From positions 152,116 to 216,115 of IMG/VR virus record IMGVR_UViG_3300025012_000027: 64,000 bases of DNA; one strand, given 5' to 3'. The notes beneath the pieces are model-generated. The model searched no databases and had not been told where the DNA came from. It was given only the letters and a program-made list of their open reading frames with translations. A program made the translations under genes and the position numbers. How positions within the stretch are numbered: position 1 is the first letter of the stretch; each line of letters starts with the position of its first letter. Of this stretch, positions 9,575 to 24,900 are shown piece by piece.

Positions 9575-9579
9575 ATATC

Positions 9580-9657: not shown

Positions 9658-9664
9658 AAAATTT

Positions 9665-9889: not shown

Positions 9890-10243
9890 CTAGTATCTAA
9901 CTACGATAACGTCCAACTCTAACTCAGTTGCTTCGTCTATCATGTTCTTAGTACCCGTACTTTTACCATCCCAGAAAGCAATTAACGTATCAGCGTAGTT
10001 TGCCATTTGTCGATTGCGTATATGTCCGGCACCTTTTCCATATCGTATCCAATCTGCCGGGAACTTTTTCACCGGTTTCTCTATCAGAACTGCCAACTTT
10101 TCACCTAATGCATCAGCCCCTTTAGCGCAGCCAGATACAACCACATCTATATATTCACCAGCAGCATAAAACTTGATGACGGTCTCTAAAACTAGATTCC
10201 AGTCATTGAAATCTCGACCACCAGCAATAATGACTTTGCTCAT
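9890..10243 (-). CDS. SLOG/YspA-like (DUF2493) protein
   Basis: VIIAGGRDF, VSGCAKGAD, AGHIRNRQMA, FWDGKSTGT; start moved downstream of tRNA-Gly. Confidence 0.85.
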   Translation of the reverse strand: MSKVIIAGGRDFNDWNLVLETVIKFYAAGEYIDVVVSGCAKGADALGEKLAVLIEKPVKKFPADWIRYGKGAGHIRNRQMANYADTLIAFWDGKSTGTKNMIDEATELELDVIVVRY

Positions 10244-10260
10244 ATGATACCTTCTAATAC

Positions 10261-10335
10261 TGGAGCGAGTAGTCGGTAATGCTCCGACTCCTGAAGTTTG
10301 GAAGACTCCCACGCATCTATAAACGCTTTACTCGC
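10261..10335 (-). tRNA. tRNA-Gly(TCC), atypical T-loop
   Basis: GGAGT-CTTCCAA-ACTTC; U73; CCA. Confidence 0.8.
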
Positions 10336-10342
10336 TAAAACC

Positions 10343-10420
10343 TGGCGACTTGTATGGGATTCGAACCCATCTATCTCCACCGTGACAGGGTGGCGTCCAC
10401 GCCTAGCAGACTCACAAGCC
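10343..10420 (-). tRNA. tRNA-Asp(GTC)
   Basis: CCACC-CTGTCAC-GGTGG; G73; CCA. Confidence 0.9.
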
Positions 10421-10679
10421 TAAATCTGTGCAACACATCAATTGGGATTCTTACCCCAGTATTTCTCGACCGTACCTTACAGGCTAGGGCCGACGCAGTT
10501 AATCACTGCAAAGATGACCGAGTGCGCGGGATCATCTACTATTTACTCTTCGAGCCTCGCTACCCAAAGTATTCATACCCCGACAGGACTTTCACCTGTA
10601 ATATACACCTGCATCTCGGTGCCTTGCTTCTGCTAAAGCCGATCAGAGGAATTGCTCCGGCTAGTGACGAGGATTCATT

Positions 10680-10751
10680 TGGTGGACCTATGGGGTATCG
10701 AGCCCCAAGCATGGCATTGCAAGTGCCTTTCCCGTCCCATACGGTAAGCCC
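10680..10751 (-). tRNA. tRNA-Ala(TGC), short D-arm
   Basis: CTTGCAA loop; G3:U70; CCA. Confidence 0.82.
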
Positions 10752-10922
10752 AAATTCGTTTTATCTGACGGTACTGATAGTATCCTTTTCCTTCGCGCTT
10801 GTGCTACTACTACTACTAGCGGGCGCAAATTCCGATTTGTCAGCTTTCATTGAAGGAGCAACCCCTCGAAAGTGTTTCTCAGTTCGGGCAATACCTTCTA
10901 ATAAAACAACTTCTTATAAATA

Positions 10923-10996
10923 TGGTCAGAGTACTAGGAATCGAACCTAGGCCACAACGCCCCAAACGTCGCATGATACCATTTCACCACACTCTG
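10923..10996 (-). tRNA. tRNA-Pro(TGG)
   Basis: CGACG-TTTGGGG-CGTTG; CCA. Confidence 0.9.
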
Positions 10997-11281
10997 ATTA
11001 ACATTATAAAACATACCCATCTAAAAACGCTGCTACTAACCCAACACCCTACACGAGCACGATGAAGTGGGTCACGTGTTATCACTGACAGATATGTTTT
11101 AAAAATGACTCCTTACACCCGCTTGTGGCGACTGTAATCTCCCGATTGAGTGTGTAAACATCACCATGTAAGGAATCTGTCTATATAAATTTTTAATGAA
11201 CCGTCAAGTGTAACTCTATCATTGCCACTTATTAACTGCTACAAATGTATTATAACACACTTTCTGCAGTCGTCAACATAT

Positions 11282-11575
11282 TTACCAATAATAATTATAG
11301 GGCTTATGGCTAACCCCGGGTGGATCAACATCTTCTATGTCTCGATGCATCACCACTTTTTCCCAAGTTCTACCAGCCCTGCGCTGCGGACGATTCATTG
11401 TAATGCGGGTCCACCAACTTGGAGTTGTCATCCAATGATCTTCCGTATCAACCTCTTTACGACGCTTTGGCTTTGTTGTTGGTAGATCAATAAGACTACC
11501 ATTCAAATAAGCCATATCGTGAGTCCAACTGTATCCAGTTAGTTTGAGTGGGCGATCTTTATAAGTTCTCGACAT
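11282..11575 (-). CDS. conserved phage hypothetical protein
   Basis: 97-aa ORF with AGGAG SD. Confidence 0.7.
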   Translation of the reverse strand: MSRTYKDRPLKLTGYSWTHDMAYLNGSLIDLPTTKPKRRKEVDTEDHWMTTPSWWTRITMNRPQRRAGRTWEKVVMHRDIEDVDPPGVSHKPYNYYW

Positions 11576-11643
11576 GTAATATACTCCTGTAATAACTACA
11601 ATCGCATATATCCTCCTAAGTTATATCAAGTATTTCGTGTTCA

Positions 11644-11760
11644 TTAACAAAACGGCAGACCTTTTCCGCAGAAAATAAGATACATAGACGAATATGCCGC
11701 TACCCATAGAACTCCGGCGAGTATAACTAGTCCGCCGACGATTTTCAGAAAAGTTCCCAT
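11644..11760 (-). CDS. small membrane peptide (38 aa)
   Basis: AGGA SD; MGTFLKIVGGLVILAGVLWVAAYSSMYLIFCGKGLPFC. Confidence 0.5.
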   Translation of the reverse strand: MGTFLKIVGGLVILAGVLWVAAYSSMYLIFCGKGLPFC

Positions 11761-11776
11761 ATGTATCCTAAGTTAT

Positions 11777-11859
11777 TGGTGGGCCGCCCGAGATTCGAAC
11801 TCGGAAAAACCTGCGGTCTAAACGCAGTAGCTGTGCCAATTTGCATATGTCAGCGGCCC
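11777..11859 (-). tRNA. tRNA-Leu(TAG), atypical
   Basis: CTGCG-TTTAGAC-CGCAG; short variable loop; CCA. Confidence 0.8.
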
Positions 11860-11866
11860 ATTAATT

Positions 11867-11953
11867 TGGTGGTTGAGGTAAGGATCGAACTTACTTGTCT
11901 GTTAAAGACCAGAGGGTTACAGCCTCCTGCCCTACCATTAGAGCATCTCAACC
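11867..11953 (-). tRNA. tRNA-Tyr(GTA)
   Basis: GGAGG-CTGTAAC-CCTCT; long variable arm; CCA. Confidence 0.9.
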
Positions 11954-11974
11954 AAATTCTAAACTATCAATTTC

Positions 11975-12058
11975 TGGTGCGCAAGGTGGGATTCGAACCC
12001 ACAAGCTGTTAAGCGTCAGATTTTAAATCTGATGTGTAGACCGTTCCACCACTTGCGC
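11975..12058 (-). tRNA. tRNA-Leu(TAA)
   Basis: TCAGA-TTTAAAA-TCTGA; variable arm; CCA. Confidence 0.92.
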
Positions 12059-12130
12059 ACATCTTCTAAGTGTCTATTATAACATAGACTTTAGCAGACT
12101 AAACGTTTTTGTAAAATATATTTTACACTT

Positions 12131-12340
12131 TCAGTATGCTTCGGCATACGCATACCACGTTCCATCGAGCAGTTGCATCGCCGACCAACCAACTCTACGA
12201 TTGCCACATGTGCATCGACGAGATTCTCCATCCCATCCACCACATTCATCTTCACAATTTTGCCCGTCGAAATCAATCAACCCACCATCCATCGAATCTT
12301 TTTTAGCTTCAATAGCCGCTTCTTCAGTTAAGAATCCCAT
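12131..12340 (-). CDS. small Cys-containing hypothetical protein
   Basis: AGGAG SD, then MGFLTEE...CEDECGGWDGESRRCTCGNRRV. Confidence 0.7.
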   Translation of the reverse strand: MGFLTEEAAIEAKKDSMDGGLIDFDGQNCEDECGGWDGESRRCTCGNRRVGWSAMQLLDGTWYAYAEAY

Positions 12341-12360
12341 AATAGATCTCCTAATAAAAA

Positions 12361-12436
12361 TGGTAGTCTGTGTAAGAATCGAACTTACGACCTTCGCTGT
12401 GTAAAAGCGTTGCTCTACCAACTGAGCTAACAGACT
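12361..12436 (-). tRNA. tRNA-Val(TAC)
   Basis: TTTACAC loop; CCA. Confidence 0.9.
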
Positions 12437-12443
12437 AAATTGT

Positions 12444-12520
12444 TGGGGCGGCCGACGGAATTCGAATCCGCACGAACAGGAATCACAATCCTGGGCTCTA
12501 CCAATTGAGCTACAGCCGCC
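12444..12520 (-). tRNA. tRNA-His(GTG) with encoded G-1
   Basis: CAGGA-TTGTGAT-TCCTG; G-1:C73. Confidence 0.92.
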
Positions 12521-12583
12521 GTAGTATAACACATATCAAATCATTCGTGTCTAGCAGTGTTTAACCACGTCTATGACAATGTA

Positions 12584-12659
12584 TGGCATCCCGGGAAGGA
12601 GTCGAACCCTCAACCTTGAGCTTTGGAGGCCCCTGCGCTGCCAATTGCGCCACCGAGAT
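12584..12659 (-). tRNA. tRNA-Trp(CCA), G27:A43 mismatch
   Basis: GGGGC-CTCCAAA-GCTCA; G73; CCA. Confidence 0.9.
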
Positions 12660-12664
12660 ATAAT

Positions 12665-12739
12665 TGGTACCCTGTGGAGGAATCGAACCACCATATAAAC
12701 TTTAGGAAAATCTTGTCCTTTCCATTGAACGAACAGGGT
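12665..12739 (-). tRNA. tRNA-Arg(CCT)
   Basis: AGATT-TTCCTAA-AGTTT; CCA. Confidence 0.85.
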
Positions 12740-12741
12740 TC

Positions 12742-12829
12742 TGGCGGATAGTATAGGATTCGAACCTATGCGCCCCTTTCGGAACGACGGTTTAGCAAAC
12801 CGTTGCCTTGACCACTCGGCCAACTATCC
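12742..12829 (-). tRNA. tRNA-Ser(GCT)
   Basis: ACGGT-TTGCTAA-ACCGT; long variable arm. Confidence 0.93.
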
Positions 12830-12836
12830 TCGTCTC

Positions 12837-12912
12837 TGGTCCCGACAGTAGAACTCGAATCTACATCTAAGGCTTCGTAGGCCATTGTTCTATCCAGTTG
12901 AACTATGTCGAG
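12837..12912 (-). tRNA. tRNA-Arg(ACG)
   Basis: CTACGAA loop; CCA. Confidence 0.88.
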
Positions 12913-12918
12913 AAATTT

Positions 12919-13013
12919 TGGCTCCCCAGAGTGGCCTCGAACCACCATATTACGCCTCGCGGCCTTTACGTCTGATTAACAGTCAGGTCTCTTACCAATT
13001 AGAGTACCGGGGA
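12919..13013 (-). tRNA. tRNA-Asn(GTT) with unusually long variable arm
   Basis: CTGTTAA loop; G73; extra GCC-GCGA-GGC hairpin. Confidence 0.85.
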
Positions 13014-13073
13014 ATAATTTGTGCAATGCTTCTCATATTGCTTGAAGGTTTCACCCAACCTCTAAGAGTGATT

Positions 13074-13149
13074 TGGTTCCTAAGACTGGACTCGAACCAG
13101 TAACACTCGATTCTTCAGACCGATGCTCTACCATTGGAGCTACTTAGGA
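13074..13149 (-). tRNA. tRNA-Phe(GAA)
   Basis: TCGGT-CTGAAGA-ATCGA; CCA. Confidence 0.9.
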
Positions 13150-13157
13150 ATATTATA

Positions 13158-13234
13158 TGGTCAGTATGGCCGGCCTCGAACCGGCATATTCTTGTTTCCA
13201 AAACAAGTCGACGTCCACTTGTCACCACATACTG
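13158..13234 (-). tRNA. tRNA-Pro(TGG), second copy
   Basis: CTTGT-TTTGGAA-ACAAG; CCA. Confidence 0.82.
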
Positions 13235-13240
13235 TTAAAC

Positions 13241-13316
13241 TGGCGCCCTTAGCAAGGATTTGAACCCGCAACCTACTCCTTACAGGGGAGTTGCACTGCC
13301 GTTGTGCTATAAGGGC
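13241..13316 (-). tRNA. tRNA-Thr(TGT), C33
   Basis: ACTCC-CCTGTAA-GGAGT; CCA. Confidence 0.8.
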
Positions 13317-13325
13317 GAAAACTTT

Positions 13326-13417
13326 TGGCGGACGCCGGAGGAGTCGAACCCCATCCCATTTCTGAGAACCTGGTTTTCAAGGCCAGTCGCAGGACCATCC
13401 CCGCTGCATCAACGTCC
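13326..13417 (-). tRNA. tRNA-Ser(TGA)
   Basis: CTTGAAA loop; long variable arm; G73. Confidence 0.88.
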
Positions 13418-13427
13418 ATAATTCTTT

Positions 13428-13505
13428 TGGTGCCCAAGGAGAGATTCGAACTCTCAGGATAATAGATTTTGAATCTACCGACTCTACCAATTTGTCTACT
13501 TGGGC
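13428..13505 (-). tRNA. tRNA-Leu(CAA), short variable loop
   Basis: GTAGA-TTCAAAA-TCTAT; A73; CCA. Confidence 0.85.
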
Positions 13506-13507
13506 TT

Positions 13508-13585
13508 TGGCAGGGGAAGTGAGATTTGAACTCACGATGACGATTTCAAAGACCGTTGCCTTAGGCCGGACTAGGCGATTCCCCA
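13508..13585 (-). tRNA. tRNA-Gln(TTG)
   Basis: ACGGT-CTTTGAA-ATCGT; CCA. Confidence 0.88.
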
Positions 13586-13772: not shown

Positions 13773-14459
13773 TTAAAACAACGACAATGCTTTGTCGACT
13801 TCAATCTTAAACCATTCACCGTTGCTGCGATCAGCAACTCCAGCAAATCTACCTAACAATTCTTTCTCATGTGACCGTCTATCATGCGTCCACTTAACCG
13901 TTATAAATGTAAACGCCTGGTGCGGATCGTTTGGAATATTGTATGCCCGCAATCTCTTCTCATAGTCTATAGTCATCCCAACCTTTATCCACCCAGGGAA
14001 GGATGGGTTAACAAGTAAGTAAACAAATCCCTCCAAAAACTTTACTTGCTCACCTCTAATTCTAATCTCGTCGCCATACTTTGCACGGATAGTTGCTAAT
14101 CGATCGCTAAGCGTTGGCACGATTCTCACCGGTGCTTTCACCGGCTGAGTGATATCAACGCTCACTGTACGACCAGCTATATATTCCGCCTGCATCAATT
14201 TTAAGGCATTTAGCATATCACTCGCTTGATCTTTAGGCAAATTAAAACGTTTCTTAATCTCAGAAACACTCATCTTCCTATGTCCGTAAATGAACCATTT
14301 CTTAGCCATCCACAATCTTTCCTCAAATTCCGACGGCGATACGCGTACAGCACAGACCACACGACGTTTCTTTGGTTTTGGCAAAGATCGACCGTACTTG
14401 GTTACTATTTCAAAATTTGTCTGTAGTCCTTTAATCGTTTCAAACTTGCGAGTTTTCAT
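13773..14459 (-). CDS. T5orf172/GIY-YIG-like endonuclease-domain protein
   Basis: GFVYLL...IKVGMT...KRL...GEWF motif. Confidence 0.8.
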   Translation of the reverse strand: MKTRKFETIKGLQTNFEIVTKYGRSLPKPKKRRVVCAVRVSPSEFEERLWMAKKWFIYGHRKMSVSEIKKRFNLPKDQASDMLNALKLMQAEYIAGRTVSVDITQPVKAPVRIVPTLSDRLATIRAKYGDEIRIRGEQVKFLEGFVYLLVNPSFPGWIKVGMTIDYEKRLRAYNIPNDPHQAFTFITVKWTHDRRSHEKELLGRFAGVADRSNGEWFKIEVDKALSLF

Positions 14460-14503
14460 ATTAACTATAGTATAACACAAAATTCTTCACTAAAACAAGA
14501 AAC

Positions 14504-14909: not shown

Positions 14910-15173
14910 TCAAGTCTTTTCAGAGATATTTTGATTTAAATCGTTGGCGGTTTTATATCGGTCGTATTTTCTATTCAATAGGTTTGAGTTGGCCGTGTCT
15001 CTGACGAGCCAGTTATCCGAAGCTGACAGCGTAGTCAGCTGTTCGTCGGATGCGTTTGTATTTTTAGCTACTATAAGCGCGACTTCGGATGATACGGATC
15101 CATCATCAACCAATTCATCGAGGTGATCTTTAGTACCATATTTAGCTAGAAATTGTTTTTGGCTTGAATTCAT
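14910..15173 (-). CDS. short LRV/HEAT-like repeat protein
   Basis: N-terminus (FLAKYGTK) paralogous to the adjacent gene. Confidence 0.7.
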   Translation of the reverse strand: MNSSQKQFLAKYGTKDHLDELVDDGSVSSEVALIVAKNTNASDEQLTTLSASDNWLVRDTANSNLLNRKYDRYKTANDLNQNISEKT

Positions 15174-15922
15174 AGTTTTCTACTCGCTAGATTCTCTTTC
15201 GCGACACGTCTAACATATCCGTGTTCATCATTAGCTAGTTTATCTAGATGTTCTTTCGAGGCATTTGGGTTACTGGCTACAGATTCTCTAACATACTCGC
15301 TTTTATCAGTAACCAGCTTGTCTAGATGATCTTTAGTTGCATTTGGACTGCTGGCCACCGACATTCTAACCACTTCTTCTTCATCATTAACCAGCTTGTC
15401 TAGATGATCTTTAGTTGCATTTGGACTGCTGGCCACCGACATTCTAACCACTTCTTCTTCATCATTACCCAGCTTGTCTAGATGCTCTTTCGAGGCGTTT
15501 ACATTCTTGGCTGCGGTTGCTCTAACCACTTCTTCATCATCATTAACCAGCTTGTCTAGATGCTCTTTAGTTGCATTTGGATTCTCGGCTACCGCACGTC
15601 TAACCCCTGCATCATCATCGTTAACCAGCTTGTCTAGATGCTCTTTCGAAGCAGTTGGGTTACTGGCTACCGCACGTCTAACATGCCAGTGTTCATCATT
15701 AGCTAGTTTATCTTGATGGACTTTAGTTGCATTTGGATTCTCGGCTACAGCTTCCCTAACATACTCGCTTTTATCGTTAACCAGCTTGTCTAGATGATCT
15801 TTCGAAGCAGTTTGACTTTTAGCTACCGCACATCTAACCTTCCAGTCTTTATCGCCGACCACTGTATCTTGATGGACTTTAGTACCGTACTTGGCTAGAA
15901 AAAGGTGTTGTTTATCATTCAT
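15170..15922 (-). CDS. leucine-rich-repeat-variant (LRV/HEAT-like) 24-aa repeat protein
   Basis: About 9 tandem VRxAVAxNPNAxKxHLDKLVND repeats (72-bp DNA repeats). Confidence 0.85.
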   Translation of the reverse strand: MNDKQHLFLAKYGTKVHQDTVVGDKDWKVRCAVAKSQTASKDHLDKLVNDKSEYVREAVAENPNATKVHQDKLANDEHWHVRRAVASNPTASKEHLDKLVNDDDAGVRRAVAENPNATKEHLDKLVNDDEEVVRATAAKNVNASKEHLDKLGNDEEEVVRMSVASSPNATKDHLDKLVNDEEEVVRMSVASSPNATKDHLDKLVTDKSEYVRESVASNPNASKEHLDKLANDEHGYVRRVAKENLASRKL

Positions 15923-16175: not shown

Positions 16176-18044
16176 CTATGCGAATTTACCCATAGTGCTT
16201 GTAATGTATCGATTGAATGAATCATCGGTGTTTTTAACAATCGCACGGGTAGGTAAGATGTTAGTCGTTGTAGAATTGTTATTCGAAATGATGTTGGTTG
16301 TGGGAGGAGCAGTCCGCGCACCGTCTGGTTTTGATAGAGTCTTTTGATTCTGTTCAATGATGTTTAGATTGTGCTCGGCCTCTTTACCTACGTTCAAATA
16401 CTCGGTTTCTTTCTTGATACGTTCTAGTTGAGCTTGTTTTGCAACATTGTCGAGGAACGTGAAACTACCCAGCTTCTCGATAGCCCTAGCAGGTCCAGAC
16501 TCGAACTTCTGCATAGCACTCATCTTCGCCCAATTAGCATCGTCTTGTGATTCGTTTACTGTACCTTCACCCACGCCCATAGAACCTAGAGCGGTATCTA
16601 TCCCCGCCAGAGTCAGGCCAGCCGCTGCTGCTGGGATGGCCAACGACCTTGCTACAGCCAATCTTTTGCCGCCAACTTTTGCCACGGTCGACATAGCAGT
16701 CTTTCCACCAGACTTCAATGCTCCCCAGCCTTTCTTGAGTGCGTCACCGGCTTTTGCTAAACCATATCCGGCCGCTGCTCCCGTAGCTGCATCTGGAACA
16801 ATAGACTCTGTAGGTTCGGGCGGAATCTGCTCTTTAGCGCGTCCATCATCGCCCATCCCAAACAACGGAGATTTTGAAAATATCGTCTTGAGTAAATCTG
16901 TCGCCCCAGTAAGGACTCCTTTACGCATGGCCAGAGGTTGCATCGGCTGCGCCTCTGTACGCTTGGCTCGGCGCGATTCTACAGCTTCGCGAGAACGACG
17001 TTGCGGATCGCGCGATTCTGCTCGTTCATCTTCGATGTCGTTGGCGGCAGTTATCGCAGATATTTTTAGCAGGTGCGTTGATGCCTGTCGCTGAATGACC
17101 AGCATTTCATCCAAAACGGCTCGACTACTAGTAACTTCCCTGCGAATGCCTTCGAACACGTCCATGGCGCGCTTGCCAAACTCGCCAGTCGTTCTACTCG
17201 TTTTTTGCTTAGGTGCTTCTTTCGGCTGTTCCGTCTCAGATTTGTCGTCAAACATCTCGCCGACTGCAACTGACGGTATGTGTCTAGTAAACGATACGGG
17301 TTTTACATCATCAATGTCATCTGCCTGCAACTTCTTCGGACGACCACCTTTTCTTAAAGGACGAGCCGATACTGTGGGGTCGGCAGATGCACCACCAGTA
17401 AACGCCCGCAGTATTGATTTTAACGTTGTGCTAAGTTCGTTTAACTTAGTGTGCTGCGTTGCATTATCGTCATGCAGCAATTCCAAGGCCTTCGGATGCT
17501 GGGCATTTGATACTAACAAGTTAGTCCCGGCTACCTGAGTCACTAACAACGCATGCGATTTCTTTGAGTACTCAAGAATATTTGAACTAGCAATCGACTG
17601 ATCTTCTAAAATATGCCATTTTGATTCTGCTTGGTCATATTGCAACGAAACAGTTTCATCGATATTAGTAAGTAACGCAGTCTGTTTCTTTATAGCAGCG
17701 GTAGTTGGATCTTCATCACCTTCTTCTTCAGCAGGTGATAGAACATCTGCTAGAGAGTCTGTGATGATGCTAGTCATTTGACTAATACCGCGACTGATAA
17801 AGTTATTACCCAATGCTTCAAATGTCGCGCTCTGAATGTTGGTTCTAACGTTAGTGATGTTGCCCAGACGTGAAGCAACATTATCAAGCAGCTTTGCAAT
17901 TGCTTGATTCTGATCCTGCAACTTTCGAAGATCGTTTACTGATGCCCCCATCCGGGTTATGGCAGACGTATCAGGAGAATATCCCTCCTGAGCAGTCATT
18001 CTCGGTGAACCTGTATTCGTAGGTCCTATATTAGGAAGCGGCAT
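16176..18044 (-). CDS. tape measure / baseplate hub protein (gp29-like)
   Basis: 622 aa, helical and Ala/Gly-rich with an Asn/Thr-rich C-terminus; follows the hub assembly genes. Confidence 0.6.
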   Translation of the reverse strand: MPLPNIGPTNTGSPRMTAQEGYSPDTSAITRMGASVNDLRKLQDQNQAIAKLLDNVASRLGNITNVRTNIQSATFEALGNNFISRGISQMTSIITDSLADVLSPAEEEGDEDPTTAAIKKQTALLTNIDETVSLQYDQAESKWHILEDQSIASSNILEYSKKSHALLVTQVAGTNLLVSNAQHPKALELLHDDNATQHTKLNELSTTLKSILRAFTGGASADPTVSARPLRKGGRPKKLQADDIDDVKPVSFTRHIPSVAVGEMFDDKSETEQPKEAPKQKTSRTTGEFGKRAMDVFEGIRREVTSSRAVLDEMLVIQRQASTHLLKISAITAANDIEDERAESRDPQRRSREAVESRRAKRTEAQPMQPLAMRKGVLTGATDLLKTIFSKSPLFGMGDDGRAKEQIPPEPTESIVPDAATGAAAGYGLAKAGDALKKGWGALKSGGKTAMSTVAKVGGKRLAVARSLAIPAAAAGLTLAGIDTALGSMGVGEGTVNESQDDANWAKMSAMQKFESGPARAIEKLGSFTFLDNVAKQAQLERIKKETEYLNVGKEAEHNLNIIEQNQKTLSKPDGARTAPPTTNIISNNNSTTTNILPTRAIVKNTDDSFNRYITSTMGKFA

Positions 18045-18213
18045 GTTGTTTCTTCTTCTCTTGGTCGTCTTTTAACAAGGCAATGTAAATTTCTCTTTCA
18101 AAGGGTAACATCGATTCCAAAATATCTAGTGACATATTGTAATCTATCATCAATCTAAAATTTGTTCTGTAGTAGGTTTCTAAGTTTTCATGAAGCAGAA
18201 CTAAACCGAAAAA
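18031..18213 (-). CDS. small baseplate hub/tail assembly ORF, possibly entered by frameshift
   Basis: ENLETYYRTNFRLM...LESMLPFEREIYIALL resembles T4-like homologues; no ATG before that segment. Confidence 0.65.
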   Translation of the reverse strand, partial: FFGLVLLHENLETYYRTNFRLMIDYNMSLDILESMLPFEREIYIALLKDDQEKKKQHAAS

Positions 18214-18904
18214 AGCTCTGCAGGCCCACCAAGCGCCTGCTATGTTTTGTTCCGCACTTAGTGCATTCAAATTCTAGGTTGTGGACCAGTTCCGGGATGC
18301 CCGATATAAATTTGTCTATACCTGCTACTTGAGAGTCGTTTAGATTCAACAACCATTCTTTCAACTCTTCTCCAGTGTAATCTGATTTCAAATATACTTG
18401 CTTGGCATCATATAAGCAGTCAATAAGACCGTAGATCATGTTGATGCTAGTATCGTCGTCATCAACAGTCTTAAACGAGTCGTCGAATGTAGGTAGTCTG
18501 AATCGAATACCCACAGTATCGGTGATCTTCACGTCCTTTACGATTGCCGAAGTGTCAATAGTGATATCATCTAACATCAAGCGACTATTGATAACTTCAT
18601 CGCAGTTATCACACTTCAATGCGAAGTCTACTTCGGGACCAACAGACGCGATTCTAAGTTGGAGGAAGAAGTACGACACATCTGCGGTAGATAGTTTATC
18701 AAACTCAACTGATCCGTTGCTACATGTATTGATAACCGATTTGATCGTGTCATATACAATATCCAAGTCATCGCTCTGTTGAGCTAGCAGCAATGCCTTT
18801 TGCTCTTTGACCACGAATGGTCTATACTTTATTTTCGTTCCGCTAACGGGTAGCGTGCATGACAGCGTAGGGCCGGTCACATTAGGAAGAGGTGGTTTAC
18901 TCAC
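18188..18904 (-). CDS. baseplate hub assembly protein (gp26/gp51-like)
   Basis: YRPFVVKEQKALLLA, two CxxC motifs, GLQSFF C-terminus. Confidence 0.85.
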   Translation of the reverse strand: MSKPPLPNVTGPTLSCTLPVSGTKIKYRPFVVKEQKALLLAQQSDDLDIVYDTIKSVINTCSNGSVEFDKLSTADVSYFFLQLRIASVGPEVDFALKCDNCDEVINSRLMLDDITIDTSAIVKDVKITDTVGIRFRLPTFDDSFKTVDDDDTSINMIYGLIDCLYDAKQVYLKSDYTGEELKEWLLNLNDSQVAGIDKFISGIPELVHNLEFECTKCGTKHSRRLVGLQSFFRFSSAS

Positions 18905-19361
18905 GATCAGACTCCATGTTCAATTGTCTCATAGCATCCTGCAATTCAGCAGTAGTACCCACAAATACGGTGTTATTCGTAACTGTGCCATTATTTACGG
19001 CAGCTGATTTGCTTGGAGCTGCTGCATCGGCTCGTTTAATCTTGTTCACCTTGTCCTGGATGTCGATGAGCTTTACAGCAATATCAGACAAGTTACCCAA
19101 CATGCTATTCAGCACCTCAAACGATCTAGGTGATTCCTCAGCGACTGCAATGCGCTTGAGATCATCAAATGCCTCAGTACCAACCTTCAATAAATTGTAC
19201 AGTGTAGACCGTACGGATTCCGCATCAGACTCTAACGAACTATTGTTCGGCACATTGGTAATTGTCGCTAAAGATGTCCCGGTTTTGTCTATAACATCGA
19301 CGACATCGGGCGCATTAAACGTATCGCTCAACGAATCAAACACTTTGGAAGTTCTGCTCAT
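18897..19361 (-). CDS. gp16: terminase small subunit
   Basis: SPRSFEV and NNTVFVGTTAELQ motifs. Confidence 0.85.
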   Translation of the reverse strand: MSRTSKVFDSLSDTFNAPDVVDVIDKTGTSLATITNVPNNSSLESDAESVRSTLYNLLKVGTEAFDDLKRIAVAEESPRSFEVLNSMLGNLSDIAVKLIDIQDKVNKIKRADAAAPSKSAAVNNGTVTNNTVFVGTTAELQDAMRQLNMESDRE

Positions 19362-19365
19362 AATG

Positions 19366-20025
19366 TCATCCTCTTAGTATAGATTGGGCCAAAGACGTAT
19401 AGTTGTCAGCTAACGTTTTAGATCGTTGCATTGTTGAGTCTATATATGCTAACGATCGGTTGATGGTGTCGTCATACGACAATGGTTCCATTGGCGATTC
19501 TAGCTTCATGGTTTCCCATGACTCATATGCCCAGCTAACCGAGAAAGCTAGGGGGCCTGCTGCATCCGAAGACATAGACACTTCGGATACTGCCTTGGGA
19601 TATACGTTGGATAGAGAAACTATGTAACTGTCATTCTTCTGAGTATCTAACTGCATCAGTTGCATCATTGGCGCGGTATAGTCTGCTGGATATTTGAACA
19701 GACCACCTTTGTTTGATACAATAGAGTGTGACCAGTTATCGAAAAAATGCTTGATAGTCATTGCCTGATCGCTGAACATAGTCATAGACACTGTACCATA
19801 TGTTTTATCAACAACCACTTCTCTAGTTAGCCCGTTATCTTTGACAGGCACTGTTAGTAATGCAAACTCGGGTAGGTTGACCCCGACCATATAGAATGGG
19901 ATTGAGGCCATAACTTCCATGTCAACATCGAATGCCGGTGGTGGGTAAACGTGACAATAGTAGTATTGTTTTGCAATACCTTTGTCTTTTATCGCCGAAA
20001 CGAATGATGCAAACTTAGCCGACAT
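19366..20025 (-). CDS. baseplate/tail tube initiator (gp54-like)
   Basis: Tube-fold features (FFDNW, YPK, WAYESW). Confidence 0.7.
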   Translation of the reverse strand: MSAKFASFVSAIKDKGIAKQYYYCHVYPPPAFDVDMEVMASIPFYMVGVNLPEFALLTVPVKDNGLTREVVVDKTYGTVSMTMFSDQAMTIKHFFDNWSHSIVSNKGGLFKYPADYTAPMMQLMQLDTQKNDSYIVSLSNVYPKAVSEVSMSSDAAGPLAFSVSWAYESWETMKLESPMEPLSYDDTINRSLAYIDSTMQRSKTLADNYTSLAQSILRG

Positions 20026-20643: not shown

Positions 20644-23115
20644 TTAACCGAAGTCTAACAAAACCTTTTCTTCAGATTCCCATCCAACCGCATCGAGAAT
20701 CGTTTGAAGGGGATTTAAAAATGCTTTATCAAACTGAGTATTGTAATCAATATATTGTTCGAGTCCGAATTCCTGTGGGAGTTTTGTCGTGTATCCAATG
20801 ACATTCTCGTATATTGGGTTTGGAACTTTCAATGCAACAAACTTGATCTTCTCACCTTCGCCGATGGGTTGATACTTATCGGTTAGGTTTAGTTTTGACA
20901 GTTGATAATTGTGCAACAGCGCAGCCCTTACGTGAATTGGACACCCCTTCTTATAGATGCTTGCTGGGTCTGAGTAAGTTGCCAGTCCATTACATCCTCG
21001 AGGGAATGAAATTGCAGTATACGGTTGTTTCATAAACTCCGTCTTAACGTTTGAAACAAATTTTTGCAACTCACTTTCGGTCGACGTAAGACACAGCTTA
21101 ACAGATCCCTTCAAGTAATCTTTCACAACTGACGGGGTCGACGATCTAACAATCTCAATACCCATAACTTTCATCTTCGGAGTATCATAATGAACCCCTT
21201 CGGAATACAGAATGTTGAATGCGTATCGTTTCTTGGCTACTTGAATGTACCCGTTACCAATACACTCCAACTTAAAGTAGATTCGACATTCATCAACGCC
21301 CATCGTTTTCGCCAGTGCTGAAAGTTTTTTGTTCAAGGTGGGTTGAACAACGTCGAAGATAATCTTTTCAATGAAGTCTACAATCTCTCGATCAGTCTTA
21401 CCTTTACAGTGTTTTTTAACAAATAAGTCAACGCTTATATAGCACGAATCGGTGTCTAAATAAAAGGCATAGTCATCTTCTTTGCCGATCAGCTTGCTAA
21501 AAATCTCGTTCACATACTCGCGAGTTTTGCGAATAAAAACTTGTCCGTTGCTCGTAATGGCTTCGGCCATTCTATAGTCATAGTATTTGAAATGGGGTAA
21601 AGCAAGGATACCATAAAATGAGTTGGCGGCGATTTTGAATGCGTTCTGTGATACATCCAATGCTCTATATTCTTGCTCAGGAGCATTTGCTATCTTCAAC
21701 TCAAGCATTCGATCTTTAGTCTTCTTACGAAGATCGAACATTCGTTTAACCAACGTTGGAATGAATCCCCATGTTTCTTTACTAGTGATCAACCCATTTG
21801 CCGATAAAATAGTCCCCTCTGAGACATTACCTATATGCTTGCCCGCCAGCATGCTGTCGATGGACATCATCTCATCCATACCCAAAATACATTCAGGCGA
21901 CGTATTAGTCTGCATCATAATACTCGGATACAAGCTCGTAGCATCGATACTGACTACCCAGCCACGTTTCCCAGGGGTTGGTGTATGTACATATGCTCCA
22001 ATGATTTTCGTACGCTCATTGGAATGTTTCTTCAAGTCTTCAACTAGGCTTTCATCTAAGAAATATGAGTAGATAATGCTTTCCCATATCCTCATGGAAG
22101 ACAGAACATCACCGTAATTCACTTTTGCGATGTATGCTATTTGCATAGCCAATCTAACCTGCAACATTTTTGTTTCTAGTTTATGCAACAACTCAACGTC
22201 AACAATGTTATATCGCACGAACATAGACCAATGCTGTTCATAGTTCTCTCTGAATGTTTCACCCGGCATTTCTAATTTGCGGTCACCCAATTCATATTCC
22301 GCAATGAAGTCTAATTTGAACGATTCTTTCTGGCCAGGATTAAACTTCTTATACAAGTCTAGATAGTCTAGATGCGAGATCCCCATGATATCATAGGTCG
22401 TATACGAATATTGCTCGGTAGTAACAGTTCTTGGCTTAACGATGCCCCATGGCGATAGCATATTAGTTAGTGCGGGCGACAACACTTGTTTCATTCGATT
22501 GACCAGGTATGGAATGTCAAATACTTCAGAGTTCCATCCACTGATTACGTCAATGCGTTTACTTTTCCAAAACAACAAGAAATCTTTAAGCATAGATTTC
22601 TCATCAGAAAATACTCTGAGGTCTACATCATACCCATCCAATTCGCCAGCATCAACCCCTTTGGTCGCCCAAGTATAATATTTCCGTTCATGATGATTCA
22701 TCATCGTAATAAGAAGGATATCTTGAAGAGCGGTTTCTGGTTTGGGGAACGCCCCATCCGTCTTCGTTTCAATATCGAAAAACCAGATTTGAGTCGTCAG
22801 ATACTGCCAGTCGATATCACCTCGATATGAATTAGCAATGTATTGACGGACTACGTTTTCACACCCAAACAGATTGAAGTTGCCGACGTCTTCATATTGA
22901 CTAATGTACCCCTTAAACTCGTCAATTGAATCGAAGTCAACTTTTTTTACAAACTGTTTTGTTGAAAAACTCTTCCACTTCGTTTCTGTTTCACTAGGCA
23001 CAAAAAGATGGGGTCTATATGGAATCTTCTTTGAAACTGCAATGCCATTTTCGTATCCTCGATACAGGATATTGTTACCACGAACTTCGACATTAGTATA
23101 GAATTTGTTGCTCAT
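20644..23115 (-). CDS. gp43: family B DNA polymerase
   Basis: FDIET exonuclease motif, DATSLYPS, KIAANSFYG, YLDTDS. Confidence 0.97.
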   Translation of the reverse strand: MSNKFYTNVEVRGNNILYRGYENGIAVSKKIPYRPHLFVPSETETKWKSFSTKQFVKKVDFDSIDEFKGYISQYEDVGNFNLFGCENVVRQYIANSYRGDIDWQYLTTQIWFFDIETKTDGAFPKPETALQDILLITMMNHHERKYYTWATKGVDAGELDGYDVDLRVFSDEKSMLKDFLLFWKSKRIDVISGWNSEVFDIPYLVNRMKQVLSPALTNMLSPWGIVKPRTVTTEQYSYTTYDIMGISHLDYLDLYKKFNPGQKESFKLDFIAEYELGDRKLEMPGETFRENYEQHWSMFVRYNIVDVELLHKLETKMLQVRLAMQIAYIAKVNYGDVLSSMRIWESIIYSYFLDESLVEDLKKHSNERTKIIGAYVHTPTPGKRGWVVSIDATSLYPSIMMQTNTSPECILGMDEMMSIDSMLAGKHIGNVSEGTILSANGLITSKETWGFIPTLVKRMFDLRKKTKDRMLELKIANAPEQEYRALDVSQNAFKIAANSFYGILALPHFKYYDYRMAEAITSNGQVFIRKTREYVNEIFSKLIGKEDDYAFYLDTDSCYISVDLFVKKHCKGKTDREIVDFIEKIIFDVVQPTLNKKLSALAKTMGVDECRIYFKLECIGNGYIQVAKKRYAFNILYSEGVHYDTPKMKVMGIEIVRSSTPSVVKDYLKGSVKLCLTSTESELQKFVSNVKTEFMKQPYTAISFPRGCNGLATYSDPASIYKKGCPIHVRAALLHNYQLSKLNLTDKYQPIGEGEKIKFVALKVPNPIYENVIGYTTKLPQEFGLEQYIDYNTQFDKAFLNPLQTILDAVGWESEEKVLLDFG

Positions 23116-23522
23116 TTATAGAAATAGTGATTTTGTATCCGTAATGTCAAGATACTTTTTGGTGTAGGTCGGAGACCAAGACTGTTGAAGTAGATAGCCC
23201 CGTTCGTAGGGTCTGTGTGTGCCCCTTGTATTATAGCACGAGCCAGTTGCTTTGTCAATGCATATGTGGTTGCATTGTTGACTGATGGCATCCAGTCTGT
23301 CCACGAAAACTGCTTCGCTTGATATACCACTTCACATATTGAGGATGGATACCTACCAGATGTTACTCGGTTTAAAACAACCCAACCAACCGCGATACGG
23401 CCGGCTAATGGTTCACCTCTTGCTTCATGATAGATTGCCTGTGACAAACATTCGAGTTCTTCATTCGCCGAAGCATTGAAAGATAGAATCCCAGCAAGAA
23501 GTATGGTAATGAATTTCTTCAT
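23112..23522 (-). CDS. cell wall hydrolase (SleB/Hydrolase_2)
   Basis: CLSQAIYHEARGE...VVLNRV...QFSW. Confidence 0.9.
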   Translation of the reverse strand: MKKFITILLAGILSFNASANEELECLSQAIYHEARGEPLAGRIAVGWVVLNRVTSGRYPSSICEVVYQAKQFSWTDWMPSVNNATTYALTKQLARAIIQGAHTDPTNGAIYFNSLGLRPTPKSILTLRIQNHYFYK

Positions 23523-23570: not shown

Positions 23571-23987
23571 TTAGTTTAGCGCAATAAGACGAGGCTTATT
23601 TTCTTCAGGAACGATGCGTTCCAGTTCGATGGTTAGCATACCATCTTCAAACTTAGCAGATCCAACTTCTACGTCATCTTGAAGGATGAACTCTCGGTTG
23701 AATGCTCTGTTGCTAATCCCTTGGTATAGATATTGGACATCCGATACATACGCCTTGCCGCCTTTAATCACTAGTCGCTCTTGGTCAACCGTAATCTCAA
23801 TATCAGATTTAGTGAAACCAGCAATGGCAAGCACAATTTGAAATCGTGTATCGGATAGCTTAATGATGTTATGCGGCGGAAACTTATCTACGGGGGTAGA
23901 CAGTCTCTTTGCAAACTGATCTAACAATGGATCAAACCCAACAAAAAATTGACGGGTCAACGATGGATCTAACAACAAGTTTTTCAT
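23571..23987 (-). CDS. small heat-shock protein Hsp20
   Basis: FPPHNI, LAIAGF, DGMLTI; start at MKNLL after AAGGAG. Confidence 0.92.
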   Translation of the reverse strand: MKNLLLDPSLTRQFFVGFDPLLDQFAKRLSTPVDKFPPHNIIKLSDTRFQIVLAIAGFTKSDIEITVDQERLVIKGGKAYVSDVQYLYQGISNRAFNREFILQDDVEVGSAKFEDGMLTIELERIVPEENKPRLIALN

Positions 23988-24069
23988 ATTACTCCTTAAA
24001 AGCAAGTATTGTCGATGATTGAGGCTATCGACTAACCATGCGCCCAAAAAGGCACGCATTCTGACGTAT

Positions 24070-24900
24070 TTATAATTTCTTAGGCCTAGGCAAATGCTGC
24101 GAGTGAAATGCCTTCCACACATATACTGGATTGGTTAAGTGATCTAACACTAATGTCGGTCTGGGATGCAATTCAAATTCGTGCCCCCGGCCCAACAAAA
24201 CTTCACGTTCGTTACCGGCCCCTGTATGCCCCAACATAGAAGCGGCATTATATACATGCTCGTCAAAATTAAGTTCTATCACATGCCTAGCGTTAGGAAG
24301 GATTATGCCTTGATGATCGGATTCATAGTGTTTGGACGTGCTATCAACCGCCGTGAATAAAGACGCCGCATCAAAATTGGTTGATGTAGATGTAAACGCC
24401 GGAAGTTGTAGTAGTTTCTTAGCCCGCGTTGAATTCCATTCCATCCCAGCAGTTGTAGCAGGCGAAACTTGGACCCCTGTATACAATTTTGTAGCCCCCA
24501 CATATGTCTTTGGTAATAGTATACTGTCTAAATGATCTACATGACTTTTAATATGAGCCGGGACAGGGGATTCGTGCAAATGATGATGCCATAGAAAATG
24601 ATTTATGTCTTGAGATCCAGACCCGCCATAGTGATCAATCGAATGTTTCACTCGAGATGATTGCGGTACTATTTTCAAAGCAGCATGAATTCGCGCCTCT
24701 TCAGATTCGTCTTCCAGGAAATCGTTCGTTGACCCAGAATACACTTCTGTCATAAGAGATTTGTCGAGACCGCATAATAGATACAGCGGGCGGATGTCAA
24801 GATCTCGACGAAACCCTGCCAGCATGGGCATGGGTATATCAGGATTTGTTACGCTGTTTACGGCTTCGAGGAGCTTAGGATGAATATCAAACGCGTCCAT
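24070..24900 (-). CDS. ADP-ribosyltransferase-like protein (VIP2/Alt/Mod fold)
   Basis: INHFLW, LYTG, FTSTS and EREVLL motifs. Confidence 0.7.
   Translation of the reverse strand: MDAFDIHPKLLEAVNSVTNPDIPMPMLAGFRRDLDIRPLYLLCGLDKSLMTEVYSGSTNDFLEDESEEARIHAALKIVPQSSRVKHSIDHYGGSGSQDINHFLWHHHLHESPVPAHIKSHVDHLDSILLPKTYVGATKLYTGVQVSPATTAGMEWNSTRAKKLLQLPAFTSTSTNFDAASLFTAVDSTSKHYESDHQGIILPNARHVIELNFDEHVYNAASMLGHTGAGNEREVLLGRGHEFELHPRPTLVLDHLTNPVYVWKAFHSQHLPRPKKL

What the first reader, a model, noticed from the sequence alone, without database searches (positions are those of the whole stretch)
18031..18240. Probable programmed frameshift between hub-assembly gene and the ORF preceding the tape measure gene
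Seen: the gp26/gp51-like gene ends AGC TTT TTT CGG TTT AGT TCT GCT TCA TGA. The +1 frame at the T6C run (18206-18215) continues FGLVLLHENLETYYRTNFRLM..., and that conserved-looking segment lies upstream of the first in-frame ATG. Known: tail assembly chaperones upstream of tape measure genes commonly use frameshifts (lambda G/GT -1, Mu -2). Inference: a +1 (or -2) slip of tRNA-Phe from TTT to TTC with a slow CGG codon in the A site gives a G/GT-like pair in a T4-like phage.
Basis: partly seen in the sequence, partly recalled or inferred. Interest (0 to 1): 0.6.

Follow-up and report, generated by a model that had tools for sequence, protein, structure and literature searches.

The report
Plus-one frameshift in tail chaperone gene
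A T4-like phage's tail assembly chaperone gene (gp26/gp51 family) needs a shift into the +1 reading frame at a conserved run of six U's to make its long form, whereas most relatives use a -1 shift at the same run; the chaperone frameshift is already known, but this direction may be new.

Summary
On the minus strand a 238-aa gp26-like gene (18904-18188, PF12322) ends AGC TTT TTT CGG ... TGA. The +1 frame from the T6 run (18214-18209) encodes 59 more residues, ending at 18031, just before a 622-aa putative tape measure gene.

The extension is homologous to the C-terminal part of T4 gp51. A read-through product aligns end to end with T4 gp51 and with PHROG 150.

Of 105 distinct related loci, 102 need a -1 shift. 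All 102 have a T-run of at least 6 placed as U_UUU_UUY, with a stop within 9 nt. The window belongs to a separate clade: 59 protein clusters, 12 checked at DNA level. All 12 have C-TTTTTT-CGN in frame, a 5-8 codon tail and the extension in +1. There is no conserved start codon, and gene callers usually leave the stretch empty.

The "slow CGG" detail is not supported, because relatives use CGA, CGC or CGT and the phage carries its own tRNA-Arg genes.

T4-like chaperones (gp26/gp51) and their poly-T -1 sites were described in 2022. The +1 (or -2) clade appears to be a new variant. Nothing here is shown experimentally.

The parts
18188..18904 (-). Short form (TAC-N): gp26-like baseplate hub / tail assembly chaperone ORF, 238 aa, with a GTG start overlapping the end of the terS-like gene
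   Evidence: PF12322 T4_baseplate E 6.6e-54. phrog_150 positions 3-234 of 282. 59 homologous clusters of 237-241 aa. The model's N-terminal 90 residues match HK97 tail assembly chaperone 2ob9 at Z 6.8.
18207..18215 (-). Shift motif C-TTTTTT-CG (T6 = 18214-18209). In frame 0 it reads TTT TTT CGG; in the +1 frame it reads GCT TTT TTC GGT.
   Evidence: Sequence. The motif is invariant in 12 of 12 DNA-level members of the clade. All 59 protein clusters end FFR plus a variable tail.
18188..18208 (-). Frame-0 tail of the short form: CGG TTT AGT TCT GCT TCA TGA (R-F-S-S-A-S-stop). Only the Arg is conserved among relatives.
18031..18210 (-). +1-frame extension (59 codons plus stop) that becomes the C-terminal domain of the long form (TAC-NC, the gp51-specific segment). 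It is predicted to form three helices after a flexible linker.
   Evidence: phrog_634 E 9.7e-18 and phrog_150 positions 230-281. The read-through product P0001 matches phrog_150 6-281 in one stretch and T4 gp51 residues 5-249 without a gap at the junction. AF2 model with pLDDT 86.8.
18201..18203 (-). TAG that closes the -1 frame four codons after the start of the T6 run, so a -1 slip would be abortive here
   Evidence: Read. The same holds in relatives.
16176..18044 (-). 622-aa ORF directly downstream, its start overlapping the end of the extension by 14 nt: putative tape measure protein (gp29 analogue). Its identity is inferred, not shown.
   Evidence: Position and size. No Pfam, PHROG or tblastn match. 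Weak language-model lead to PF25671 T4_Tape_measure, score 0.90. A long ORF sits at the same place in all relatives.
18897..20025 (-). Conserved upstream context: tail-tube-like gene (19366-20025) and terS-like gene (18897-19361)
   Evidence: phrog_45 and phrog_445. The same order, Phage_TTP_2 - about 150-aa ORF - PF12322 gene - gap - long ORF, occurs in relatives.

Best explanation
The 238-aa gene encodes the short form (TAC-N) of a T4-type tail assembly chaperone, the counterpart of T4 gp26. A minority of ribosomes translating it change to the +1 frame at UUU UUU CGG (18214-18206). They go on for 59 codons and make a 290-aa long form (TAC-NC). This is the counterpart of T4 gp51, which T4 encodes as a separate gene.

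The most likely event is a P-site slip of peptidyl-tRNA-Phe from the second UUU to the overlapping UUC while the Arg CGN codon waits in the A site, followed by decoding of the +1-frame GNN codon (product ...S-F-F-G-L-V-L-L-H). A -2 slip on the same run (product with one extra Phe) is the next most likely.

By analogy with lambda G/GT, the shared N-terminal domain would coat the tape measure protein encoded just downstream. The rare helical C-terminal domain would then recruit tube or hub components.

Shown here:
- the sequence anatomy;
- homology of both parts to T4 gp51;
- conservation of motif, offset and synteny;
- absence of a conserved start codon.

Inferred:
- that the shift happens at all;
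- its direction and efficiency;
- the chaperone role.
For: 1. The extension is the missing C-terminus of the family. ORF1 covers phrog_150 positions 3-234 and the +1 ORF covers 230-281. T4 gp26 covers 14-235 and T4 gp51 covers 13-280, plus phrog_634. The read-through product P0001 matches phrog_150 6-281 in one stretch (E 1.4e-66) and aligns to T4 gp51 5-249 across the junction without a gap.

2. Survey of 105 distinct loci. 102 have offset -1, and every one has a T-run of at least 6 starting at the third base of the preceding codon (always NNT), with a frame-0 stop within 9 nt. 92 of 102 have no start codon upstream in the second frame. 28 have a stop 0-1 codon before the run.

3. The window's clade. 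59 protein clusters of 47-69% identity all end FFR plus a variable tail, and none is fused. 12 of 12 DNA sequences have NNC TTT TTT CGN, a short tail and the conserved extension in +1. The clade is monophyletic with SH-aLRT 100.

4. No conserved independent start exists. Gene callers left the roughly 140-nt stretch empty in 9 of 10 relatives.

5. The flanking C's fit a +1 slip. The 3' C creates UUC. The 5' C avoids a U_UUU_UUU -1 heptamer that would lead into a closed frame.

6. T6+ runs are about 3-fold depleted in this genome's coding strands. Other T6 runs near gene ends open no alternative frame.

7. The AF2 model of P0001 has pLDDT 86.8. The junction lies in a low-confidence linker (residues 233-238) between a confident N-domain and a three-helix C-domain. 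The top structural matches to residues 7-97 are 3fgx, HK97 tail assembly chaperone 2ob9 (Z 6.8) and 3klu.

8. Literature. gp26/gp51 were identified as the chaperones of T4-like phages, with poly-T -1 sites in some (Vladimirov et al. 2022, as cited in PMC10885494 and PMC12846349). The +1 frame can be reached by +1 or -2 shifts, and phage Mu uses -2 (PMC5009743).
Against:
- No conserved RNA structure follows the site, and no SD-like element sits at the 3-nt spacing known for RF2.
- The A-site Arg codon is not a consistently rare one (CGA, CGC, CGT and CGG are all used), and the phage encodes tRNA-Arg(UCG) and tRNA-Arg(ACG). The pause that a +1 slip normally needs is therefore unexplained.
- The review PMC5009743 notes that UUU_U is a much poorer +1 site than CUU_U in E. 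coli RF2 contexts.
- Invariance of the Arg could have another cause.
- Three clade members have an ATG six codons after the run, and one gene caller used it.
- In some distant lineages a TGATG or TAATG overlap could allow separate translation of the small ORF.
- The tape measure identity of the downstream gene is only inferred.
Confidence: 0.7

Rival explanations
1. The recoding is ribosomal but is a -2 slip, not +1. With UUU UUU in the P and A sites, the A-site tRNA-Phe re-pairs two bases back on the U-run. UUC is then read as a third Phe, giving ...S-F-F-F-G-L-V. (This is included in the 0.7 above as the second option; the figure here is its share.)
For: The U6 run allows perfect A-site re-pairing at -2. 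-2 shifts occur in phage Mu's tail chaperone gene and in arteriviruses (PMC5009743), and on U6A heptamers depending on spacing (PMC3458567 abstract). The clade keeps the purine-rich GAGGG/GTGGG element about 10 nt upstream of the run. In the -1 relatives this element shows codon bias towards an SD-like sequence. An upstream SD at that spacing is known to favour backward slips, not forward ones. A switch from -1 to -2 would need no new signal.
Against: P-site re-pairing at -2 (on GCU or ACU) is poor. The invariant C after the run is needed by the +1 model and not by the -2 model. The +1 product keeps the same spacing between FF and the L-H-[DE] motif as the -1 relatives and T4 gp51, while the -2 product adds a residue.
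Confidence: 0.22
2. Transcriptional slippage. RNA polymerase occasionally drops one U on the T6 tract, giving an mRNA in which the two ORFs are in frame. In the -1 relatives it would add one U.
For: One homopolymer serving both offset classes is what a polymerase-slippage mechanism would tolerate. 39 of 102 -1 loci have T7 or T8 runs. The title of Vladimirov et al. [quoted passage not shown]
Against: The run is exactly six, flanked by C on both sides, in 12 of 12 clade members. Selection for slippage should favour longer runs, and known bacterial cases use about 8-9 (own knowledge). In the -1 class the strict phase of the run (always X_XXY_YYZ, 102 of 102) and the nearby stop are ribosomal features that polymerase slippage does not need.
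Confidence: 0.12
3. There is no fusion. The downstream frame is translated on its own as a small 'gp51' protein, as GenBank annotates it in cyanophages. Translation would start from a non-canonical or internal start codon, or by reinitiation after the gp26-like stop.
For: Public records annotate separate small ORFs. Some lineages have TGATG or TAATG overlaps with an ATG 3-4 codons after the run, and Vibrio phage YC has no T-run at all. Three members of the window's clade have an ATG six codons after the run.
Against: The window has no ATG, GTG or TTG between the run and the conserved L-H-E-N-L-E-x-Y-Y segment. Its first ATG lies 21 codons in, and its only upstream TTG is not conserved and lacks an SD. 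Annotated cyanophage starts cut off about 20 conserved residues. 28 -1 loci have a stop directly before the run. In T4 the same segment is covalently part of gp51. An independent start would not explain the invariant, phase-locked T-run.
Confidence: 0.1
4. Artefact or decay: a homopolymer sequencing error or a recent frameshift mutation split an originally single gp51-like gene.
For: Homopolymer runs are error-prone, and the two frames join into a full-length family member.
Against: Twelve independent assemblies from different samples, diverged to 47-69% protein identity, share the same offset, run length and tail. No fused member of the clade was found among 59 clusters. The frame-0 tail always ends at a stop within 5-8 codons.
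Confidence: 0.02

Closest known systems
T4 gp26 and gp51 (PF12322; identified as the tail assembly chaperones of T4-like phages by Vladimirov, Gautam and Davidson, Virology 2022; known here only through citing papers PMC10885494 and PMC12846349)
   Same: The family is the same. ORF1 matches PF12322 and phrog_150 as gp26 does. ORF1 plus the extension is collinear with gp51 over its whole length. The short/long pair has the same logic.
   Different: T4 encodes the two forms as two separate, divergently transcribed genes and needs no recoding. The window has one gene plus a +1-frame extension.
-1 frameshift loci of T4-like cyanophages and other aquatic myoviruses (e.g. S-RSM4 g26/g51, S-CAM1, HTVC008M, nt-1, Cr30, ACP17)
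   Same: The two protein parts, the Phe-Phe junction encoded by a T-run and the position near hub and tape measure genes are all the same.
   Different: There the run is phased U_UUU_UUY, frame 0 stops within 9 nt and the extension is in the -1 frame (102 of 102 loci). In the window the run is phased UUU_UUU, it is flanked by C's, frame 0 runs on for 7 codons and the extension is in +1.
Lambda G/GT and the conserved tail chaperone frameshift of long-tailed phages (Levin 1993; Xu, Hendrix and Duda 2004, as summarised in PMC5009743)
   Same: Two products share an N-terminus, the long one is made by a rare shift near the 3' end, and the gene lies just before the tape measure gene. The N-terminal fold resembles HK97 chaperone 2ob9.
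   Different: There is no detectable sequence similarity to lambda G. The N-domain is larger (about 230 aa with two Cys pairs). The shift is into +1 rather than -1. Function and product ratio are untested.
Phage Mu tail chaperone (-2) and Listeria phage PSA, A118 and A500 tail and capsid genes (+1 at CCC_UGA or CCC_UCC) (PMC5009743)
   Same: These are phage structural or assembly genes in which the +1 frame is reached by recoding. They show that direction can differ between related phages.
   Different: The shift sites differ (a G-run in Mu, from my own memory; a Pro codon next to a stop or a pseudoknot in PSA). Here the site is a U6 run followed by a sense Arg codon, with no detectable structure.
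Yeast Ty1 CUU_AGG_C and bacterial RF2 CUU_UGA_C +1 sites
   Same: The proposed logic is the same: a P-site tRNA that can re-pair one base forward, an Arg or stop codon waiting in the A site, and a G-starting +1 codon.
   Different: The A-site codon here is not demonstrably rare. There is no SD at 3 nt. The resemblance is a lead drawn from the sequence, not a tested membership.

Membership tests
T4 gp26/gp51 family (Pfam PF12322 T4_baseplate; PHROG 150 / 634) | PF12322 domain above the curated cut-off | tested here: met
   183.3 bits against a cut-off of 24.5, residues 13-233; confirmed on the genome.
T4 gp26/gp51 family (Pfam PF12322 T4_baseplate; PHROG 150 / 634) | gp51-type C-terminal segment contiguous with the PF12322 domain | tested here: met
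   Met only through the +1 frame. phrog_634 E 9.7e-18 for the small ORF. The read-through product covers phrog_150 6-281 of 282 and T4 gp51 5-249.
Frameshifting tail assembly chaperone (lambda G/GT paradigm) | Gene lies immediately upstream of the tape measure gene | tested here: inconclusive
   A 622-aa ORF follows with a 14-nt overlap, and a long ORF follows in all relatives. Its tape measure identity rests on position, size and a weak atlas lead. There is no Pfam, PHROG or BLAST match.
Frameshifting tail assembly chaperone (lambda G/GT paradigm) | Second ORF overlaps the 3' end of the first, lacks its own start, and is conserved together with a slippery sequence among relatives | tested here: met
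Frameshifting tail assembly chaperone (lambda G/GT paradigm) | Canonical -1 heptamer X_XXY_YYZ leading into the extension | tested here: not met
   In the window the run is in phase 0, the -1 frame closes after 4 codons and the extension is in +1. The feature is met in 102 of 102 -1-class relatives.
Frameshifting tail assembly chaperone (lambda G/GT paradigm) | Fold like solved tail assembly chaperones | tested here: inconclusive
   The VIA-align wide search's three best rows for residues 7-97 are 3fgx (Z 7.0), HK97 chaperone 2ob9 (Z 6.8, rmsd 3.8, 80 aa) and 3klu YqbN (Z 6.5). From my memory, 3fgx and 3klu were also classed as chaperones. Z values under 8 are in the tool's grey zone, and Foldseek found nothing.
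Frameshifting tail assembly chaperone (lambda G/GT paradigm) | Both products are made at a fixed ratio, both are needed for tail assembly, and both are absent from virions | not testable with these tools
   Needs proteomics and genetics.
+1 ribosomal frameshift sites of the Ty1 / RF2 type | P-site codon whose tRNA can re-pair in the +1 frame | tested here: met
   UUU to UUC for tRNA-Phe(GAA). The C after the run is invariant in 12 of 12 sequences. The phage itself encodes tRNA-Phe(GAA).
+1 ribosomal frameshift sites of the Ty1 / RF2 type | Slowly decoded A-site codon (rare sense codon or stop) | tested here: inconclusive
   The codon is always Arg CGN (59 of 59 clusters), but all four CGN are used. 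CGG is among the rarest Arg codons in the window (3.0 per 1000) while CGA is not (9.4 per 1000). The phage encodes tRNA-Arg UCG, ACG, CCU and UCU. The host is unknown.
+1 ribosomal frameshift sites of the Ty1 / RF2 type | Stimulator: SD-like sequence 3 nt upstream (RF2) or a downstream structure | tested here: not met
   There is no SD-like sequence next to the run; the nearest purine-rich element is about 10 nt upstream. RNAalifold finds no conserved pairs in 100 nt downstream. The single-sequence fold has z = -0.62.
Programmed transcriptional slippage | Long homopolymer (about 8-9 or more in bacteria; own knowledge) | tested here: not met
   The run is exactly T6, bounded by C on both sides, in 12 of 12 clade members.

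The most novel reading that the evidence does not exclude
A whole clade of large T4-like phages (at least 59 protein clusters) has switched its tail chaperone recoding from the ancestral -1 shift to a +1 (or -2) shift on the same U6 tract. It uses a minimal, structure-free cassette, C-UUU-UUU-CGN, whose flanking bases are invariant. This would be a natural matched pair of -1 and +1 sites in orthologous genes. It would also be the first +1-frame case in the T4-type chaperone family, if the 2022 paper, which I could not read, does not already report it.
Probability: 0.45. Interest if true: 0.7.

Novelty: new variant of a known kind. Interest (0 to 1): 0.5.

Why it matters
1. Annotation. In this clade the long chaperone form is missed entirely, because gene callers leave about 140 nt empty. 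In hundreds of public cyanophage and vibriophage records 'gp51' is annotated as a truncated stand-alone ORF, without any joined (slippage) coding feature in the records inspected.

2. Recoding biology. Orthologous genes use the same U-run for opposite directions of shift, and T4 has resolved the pair into two genes. Together these give a natural series for asking what sets direction and efficiency. The invariant C-U6-CG motif, which has no RNA structure, is a compact candidate +1 signal that is easy to test in reporters.

3. Phage assembly. It supports the view that T4-type contractile tails use a G/GT-like short/long chaperone pair.

Tried and rejected
- Nucleotide search of the phage collection with the 5-kb region found no match.
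- tblastn of the 622-aa downstream protein found no match. BLASTP against T4 gp29 gave nothing significant. The tape measure identity therefore stays inferred.
No reads were laid, so I could not check T-run length in raw DNA or look for RNA indels.
- The single-sequence RNA fold around the site gave z = -0.62, with an 8-bp hairpin that encloses the run but is not conserved in relatives. RNAalifold on 9 clade members predicted no pairs. The idea of a downstream stimulatory structure was dropped.
- Foldseek against the PDB gave no match at E <= 0.001.
- The PDB sequence search with the read-through product gave nothing.
- Complex prediction of the 622-aa protein with the gp26-like protein returned 'no answer' (score 0.00). 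This is not evidence either way.
- Other T6 runs near 3' ends of genes in the window (35451-36758 and 39713-41215, minus strand) open no alternative frame.
- The Vladimirov 2022 paper is not held. Searches for gp26/gp51 frameshift literature returned only unrelated phages that share the gene numbers.
- The four-letter reading CGGT=G was used only to write the +1 product for searches and a fold. It is not a claim about the genetic code.
Full report
**What is in the sequence.** All genes around the finding lie on the minus strand. Reading 5' to 3' on that strand they are:
- a family-B DNA polymerase (23115-20644);
- a gp2-like DNA end protector (20624-20025);
- a tail-tube-like gene (20025-19366);
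- a terS-like gene (19361-18897);
- a 238-aa ORF (18904-18188);
- an overlapping 79-codon open frame (18270-18031);
- a 622-aa ORF (18044-16176).

The T6 run is 18214-18209. The overlapping frame is +1 relative to the 238-aa ORF. From the run it reads AFFGLVLLHENLETYYRTNFRLM..., and its first ATG (18150-18148) lies 21 codons after the run. The only start-like codon upstream is a TTG at 18270, two codons after a TAG and without a Shine-Dalgarno sequence. The -1 frame closes after four codons. The window is the last 64 kb of a complete 216-kb IMG/VR virus record.

**What the two frames encode.**
- The 238-aa ORF is a member of PF12322 (T4_baseplate, E 6.6e-54) and covers positions 3-234 of the 282-position PHROG 150.
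- The small frame matches PHROG 634 ('baseplate hub assembly catalyst', E 9.7e-18) and positions 230-281 of PHROG 150. It is therefore the missing C-terminal end of longer family members.
- T4 shows both forms. gp26 (208 aa) is the PF12322 domain alone. gp51 (249 aa) is the same domain plus a C-terminal part that matches PHROG 634.
- Reading the window through the site with one forward step gives a 290-aa product, P0001. It matches PHROG 150 from 6 to 281 in a single stretch (E 1.4e-66). It also aligns to T4 gp51 residues 5-249 with no gap at the junction.

**Relatives: one run, two offsets.** tblastn finds the first ORF in 610-644 phage records and the extension in 528, mostly T4-like cyanophages plus Vibrio, Pelagibacter, Caulobacter, Rhizobium, Stenotrophomonas and other phages. 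The extension match straddles the features annotated 'gp26' and 'gp51'. I collected 105 distinct loci from IMG/VR, metagenomes and isolates and measured them.

In 102 loci the extension is in the -1 frame. For these:
- all 102 have a T-run of 6-8 that starts at the third base of the preceding codon (AGT 63, AAT 19, GAT 13, TCT 5, CGT 1, GGT 1; never another third base), which is the classical U_UUU_UUY heptamer;
- frame 0 stops within 9 nt of the run;
- 92 have no start codon upstream in the second frame, and 28 have a stop directly before the run.

In S-RSM4 the annotated g51 starts 21 codons after the point where homology begins.

**The window's clade.** The remaining three loci, the window among them, need +1. 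A protein search then showed this group to be large. There are 59 clusters of 237-241 aa at 47-69% identity. All end FFR plus a variable tail of five to eight residues, and none is fused. DNA was obtained for twelve members in all. Every one reads NNC TTT TTT CGN, has a short tail before its stop, and carries the conserved extension in +1. Synteny is constant (tube-like gene, terS-like gene, PF12322 gene, then a long ORF), and gene callers left the 140-nt stretch empty in 9 of 10 relatives. The clade is monophyletic (SH-aLRT 100). With T4 as outgroup it sits among -1 lineages, which fits a single switch from -1 to +1. The root rests on long branches, so this is not secure.

**How it most likely works.** The shift must occur at or within a codon of the run. 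The residues after FF follow the family pattern (x-[LI]-x-[LF] then H-[DE]) only in the +1 frame, and the spacing then equals that of the -1 relatives and of gp51. The run is the only slippery element.

I favour a P-site slip of tRNA-Phe from UUU to UUC with Arg CGN in the A site, followed by decoding of a GNN codon. This model explains two invariant features:
- the C after the run, which creates UUC;
- the C before it, which avoids a U_UUU_UUU heptamer that would send ribosomes into a closed -1 frame.

The frame-0 Arg is the only conserved residue of an otherwise free tail, which points to a nucleotide-level or decoding-level role. The codon is CGA in 7 members, CGC in 3, CGT in 1 and CGG only in the window. 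The phage also carries tRNA-Arg(UCG, ACG, CCU, UCU) and tRNA-Phe(GAA) among 23 tRNA genes in the window.

No conserved RNA structure follows the site. A -2 slip on the same run is a serious alternative. It needs no new signal. It would also fit the purine-rich element about 10 nt upstream, which in the -1 class is biased towards SD-like codons: GAG 50 to GAA 29 at that Glu, against 548 to 1765 elsewhere in the same genes. The review PMC5009743 documents -2 shifts in phage Mu and notes cases where related genes use either direction.

Homopolymer runs are about three-fold depleted in this genome's coding strands. Retention of this one is therefore meaningful.

**Structure.** An AlphaFold2 model of the read-through product was built on an alignment of N-terminal and C-terminal homologues, and has mean pLDDT 86.8 and pTM 0.74. 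The N-domain (to residue 232) is confident. Residues 233-238, just after the junction, form a low-confidence linker. Residues 241-289 form three helices.

An exhaustive structural comparison puts three small prophage or phage proteins on top for residues 7-97. Among them is the HK97 tail assembly chaperone 2ob9 (Z 6.8, rmsd 3.8 A, 80 residues). These Z values are in the tool's grey zone, so I count this as consistent rather than proving. BFVD matches are gp26/gp51-type hub proteins of many myoviruses.

[quoted passage not shown] According to them, some such phages carry one short gene and one longer fused gene instead of a frameshift (PMC10885494). They also say poly-T sequences are -1 frameshift signals in the short-form genes of T4-like phages (PMC12846349). 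I could not read the paper itself.

The general finding is therefore not new: gp26/gp51 as a G/GT-like pair, with -1 at a T-run in many relatives. I found no mention anywhere in the held literature of the +1-frame clade with its invariant C-U6-CG motif. None of the public records I inspected annotates a joined coding feature.

**Rivals and limits.**
- Transcriptional slippage would tolerate both offsets. It fits poorly with a run fixed at six and with the strict phasing in the -1 class.
- Independent translation of the small frame is possible in some distant lineages that have TGATG or TAATG overlaps, and perhaps in three clade members with an ATG six codons in. The window has no usable start before the conserved segment.
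- Sequencing error is excluded by twelve independent assemblies.
- Nothing here shows that the long form is made, at what level, or that either form binds the downstream protein. That protein's tape measure identity is itself inferred from position, size and a weak language-model lead.

Noticed in passing
window 1179-13585 (minus strand): An array of 23 tRNA genes, including four tRNA-Arg (UCU, UCG, CCU, ACG), tRNA-Phe(GAA) and three tRNA-Met. ARAGORN also calls a permuted tmRNA-like gene just outside the window, at genome 150291-150690.
   Followed up: partly
-1-class loci, e.g. L011:2484-2507, L012:2484-2507; window 18224-18229: About 9-10 nt upstream of the slippery heptamer, the conserved Glu-Gly codons are biased towards SD-like GAGGR. 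GAG to GAA is 50:29 at this Glu against 548:1765 elsewhere in the same genes, and GGA/GGG are enriched. This resembles the upstream SD stimulator of E. coli dnaX. It is confounded by amino-acid conservation and shared ancestry.
   Followed up: partly
L011 (S-RSM4) 2501-2698; L012 (S-CAM1) 2501-2683; L140 (HTVC008M); L139 (nt-1): Public records annotate 'gp51 / baseplate hub assembly catalyst' as a stand-alone ORF starting at an internal ATG, or do not annotate it at all. This cuts off about 20 conserved residues that begin at the T-run. No inspected record carries a joined (slippage) coding feature.
   Followed up: yes
L031 (Stenotrophomonas BUCT608), L032 (Caulobacter Cr30), L033 (Rhizobium RHph_I34), L035 (Vibrio phage YC): Some lineages combine the T-run with a TGATG overlap that places an ATG 3-4 codons after it. 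RHph_I34 has T_TTT_TTG. The Ackermannviridae phage YC has no T-run at all, only a TAATG overlap. The small domain may be made separately there by coupled reinitiation, which would be a third solution beside frameshifting and T4's two genes.
   Followed up: partly
whole genome G000; window genes 35451-36758 and 39713-41215 (minus strand): T6+ and A6+ runs are 2- to 4-fold depleted in coding strands relative to codon-shuffled genes. Several of the surviving T6 runs sit within 50 nt of gene ends, but the two checked open no alternative frame.
   Followed up: partly
window 15170-15922 and 14910-15173 (minus strand): Two adjacent ORFs made of repeats of about 28-30 residues (...HLDKLVNDxxxxVRxAVAxNPNATKE...). 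By eye these are HEAT- or LRV-like repeats. No tool was run on them.
   Followed up: no
window 13773-14480, 23112-23522, 23571-24122 (minus strand): By eye only: an ORF with a GIY-YIG/T5orf172-like C-terminal motif, a secreted SleB-like cell-wall hydrolase, and a small heat-shock (Hsp20-like) protein next to the DNA polymerase gene. None was checked with tools.
   Followed up: no
window 18897-19361 (minus strand): A terS-like gene (phrog_445, weak PF11053) sits between the tube-like gene and the chaperone gene. The same order is kept in all clade members, which is an unusual place for a small terminase gene in a T4-like phage.
   Followed up: no
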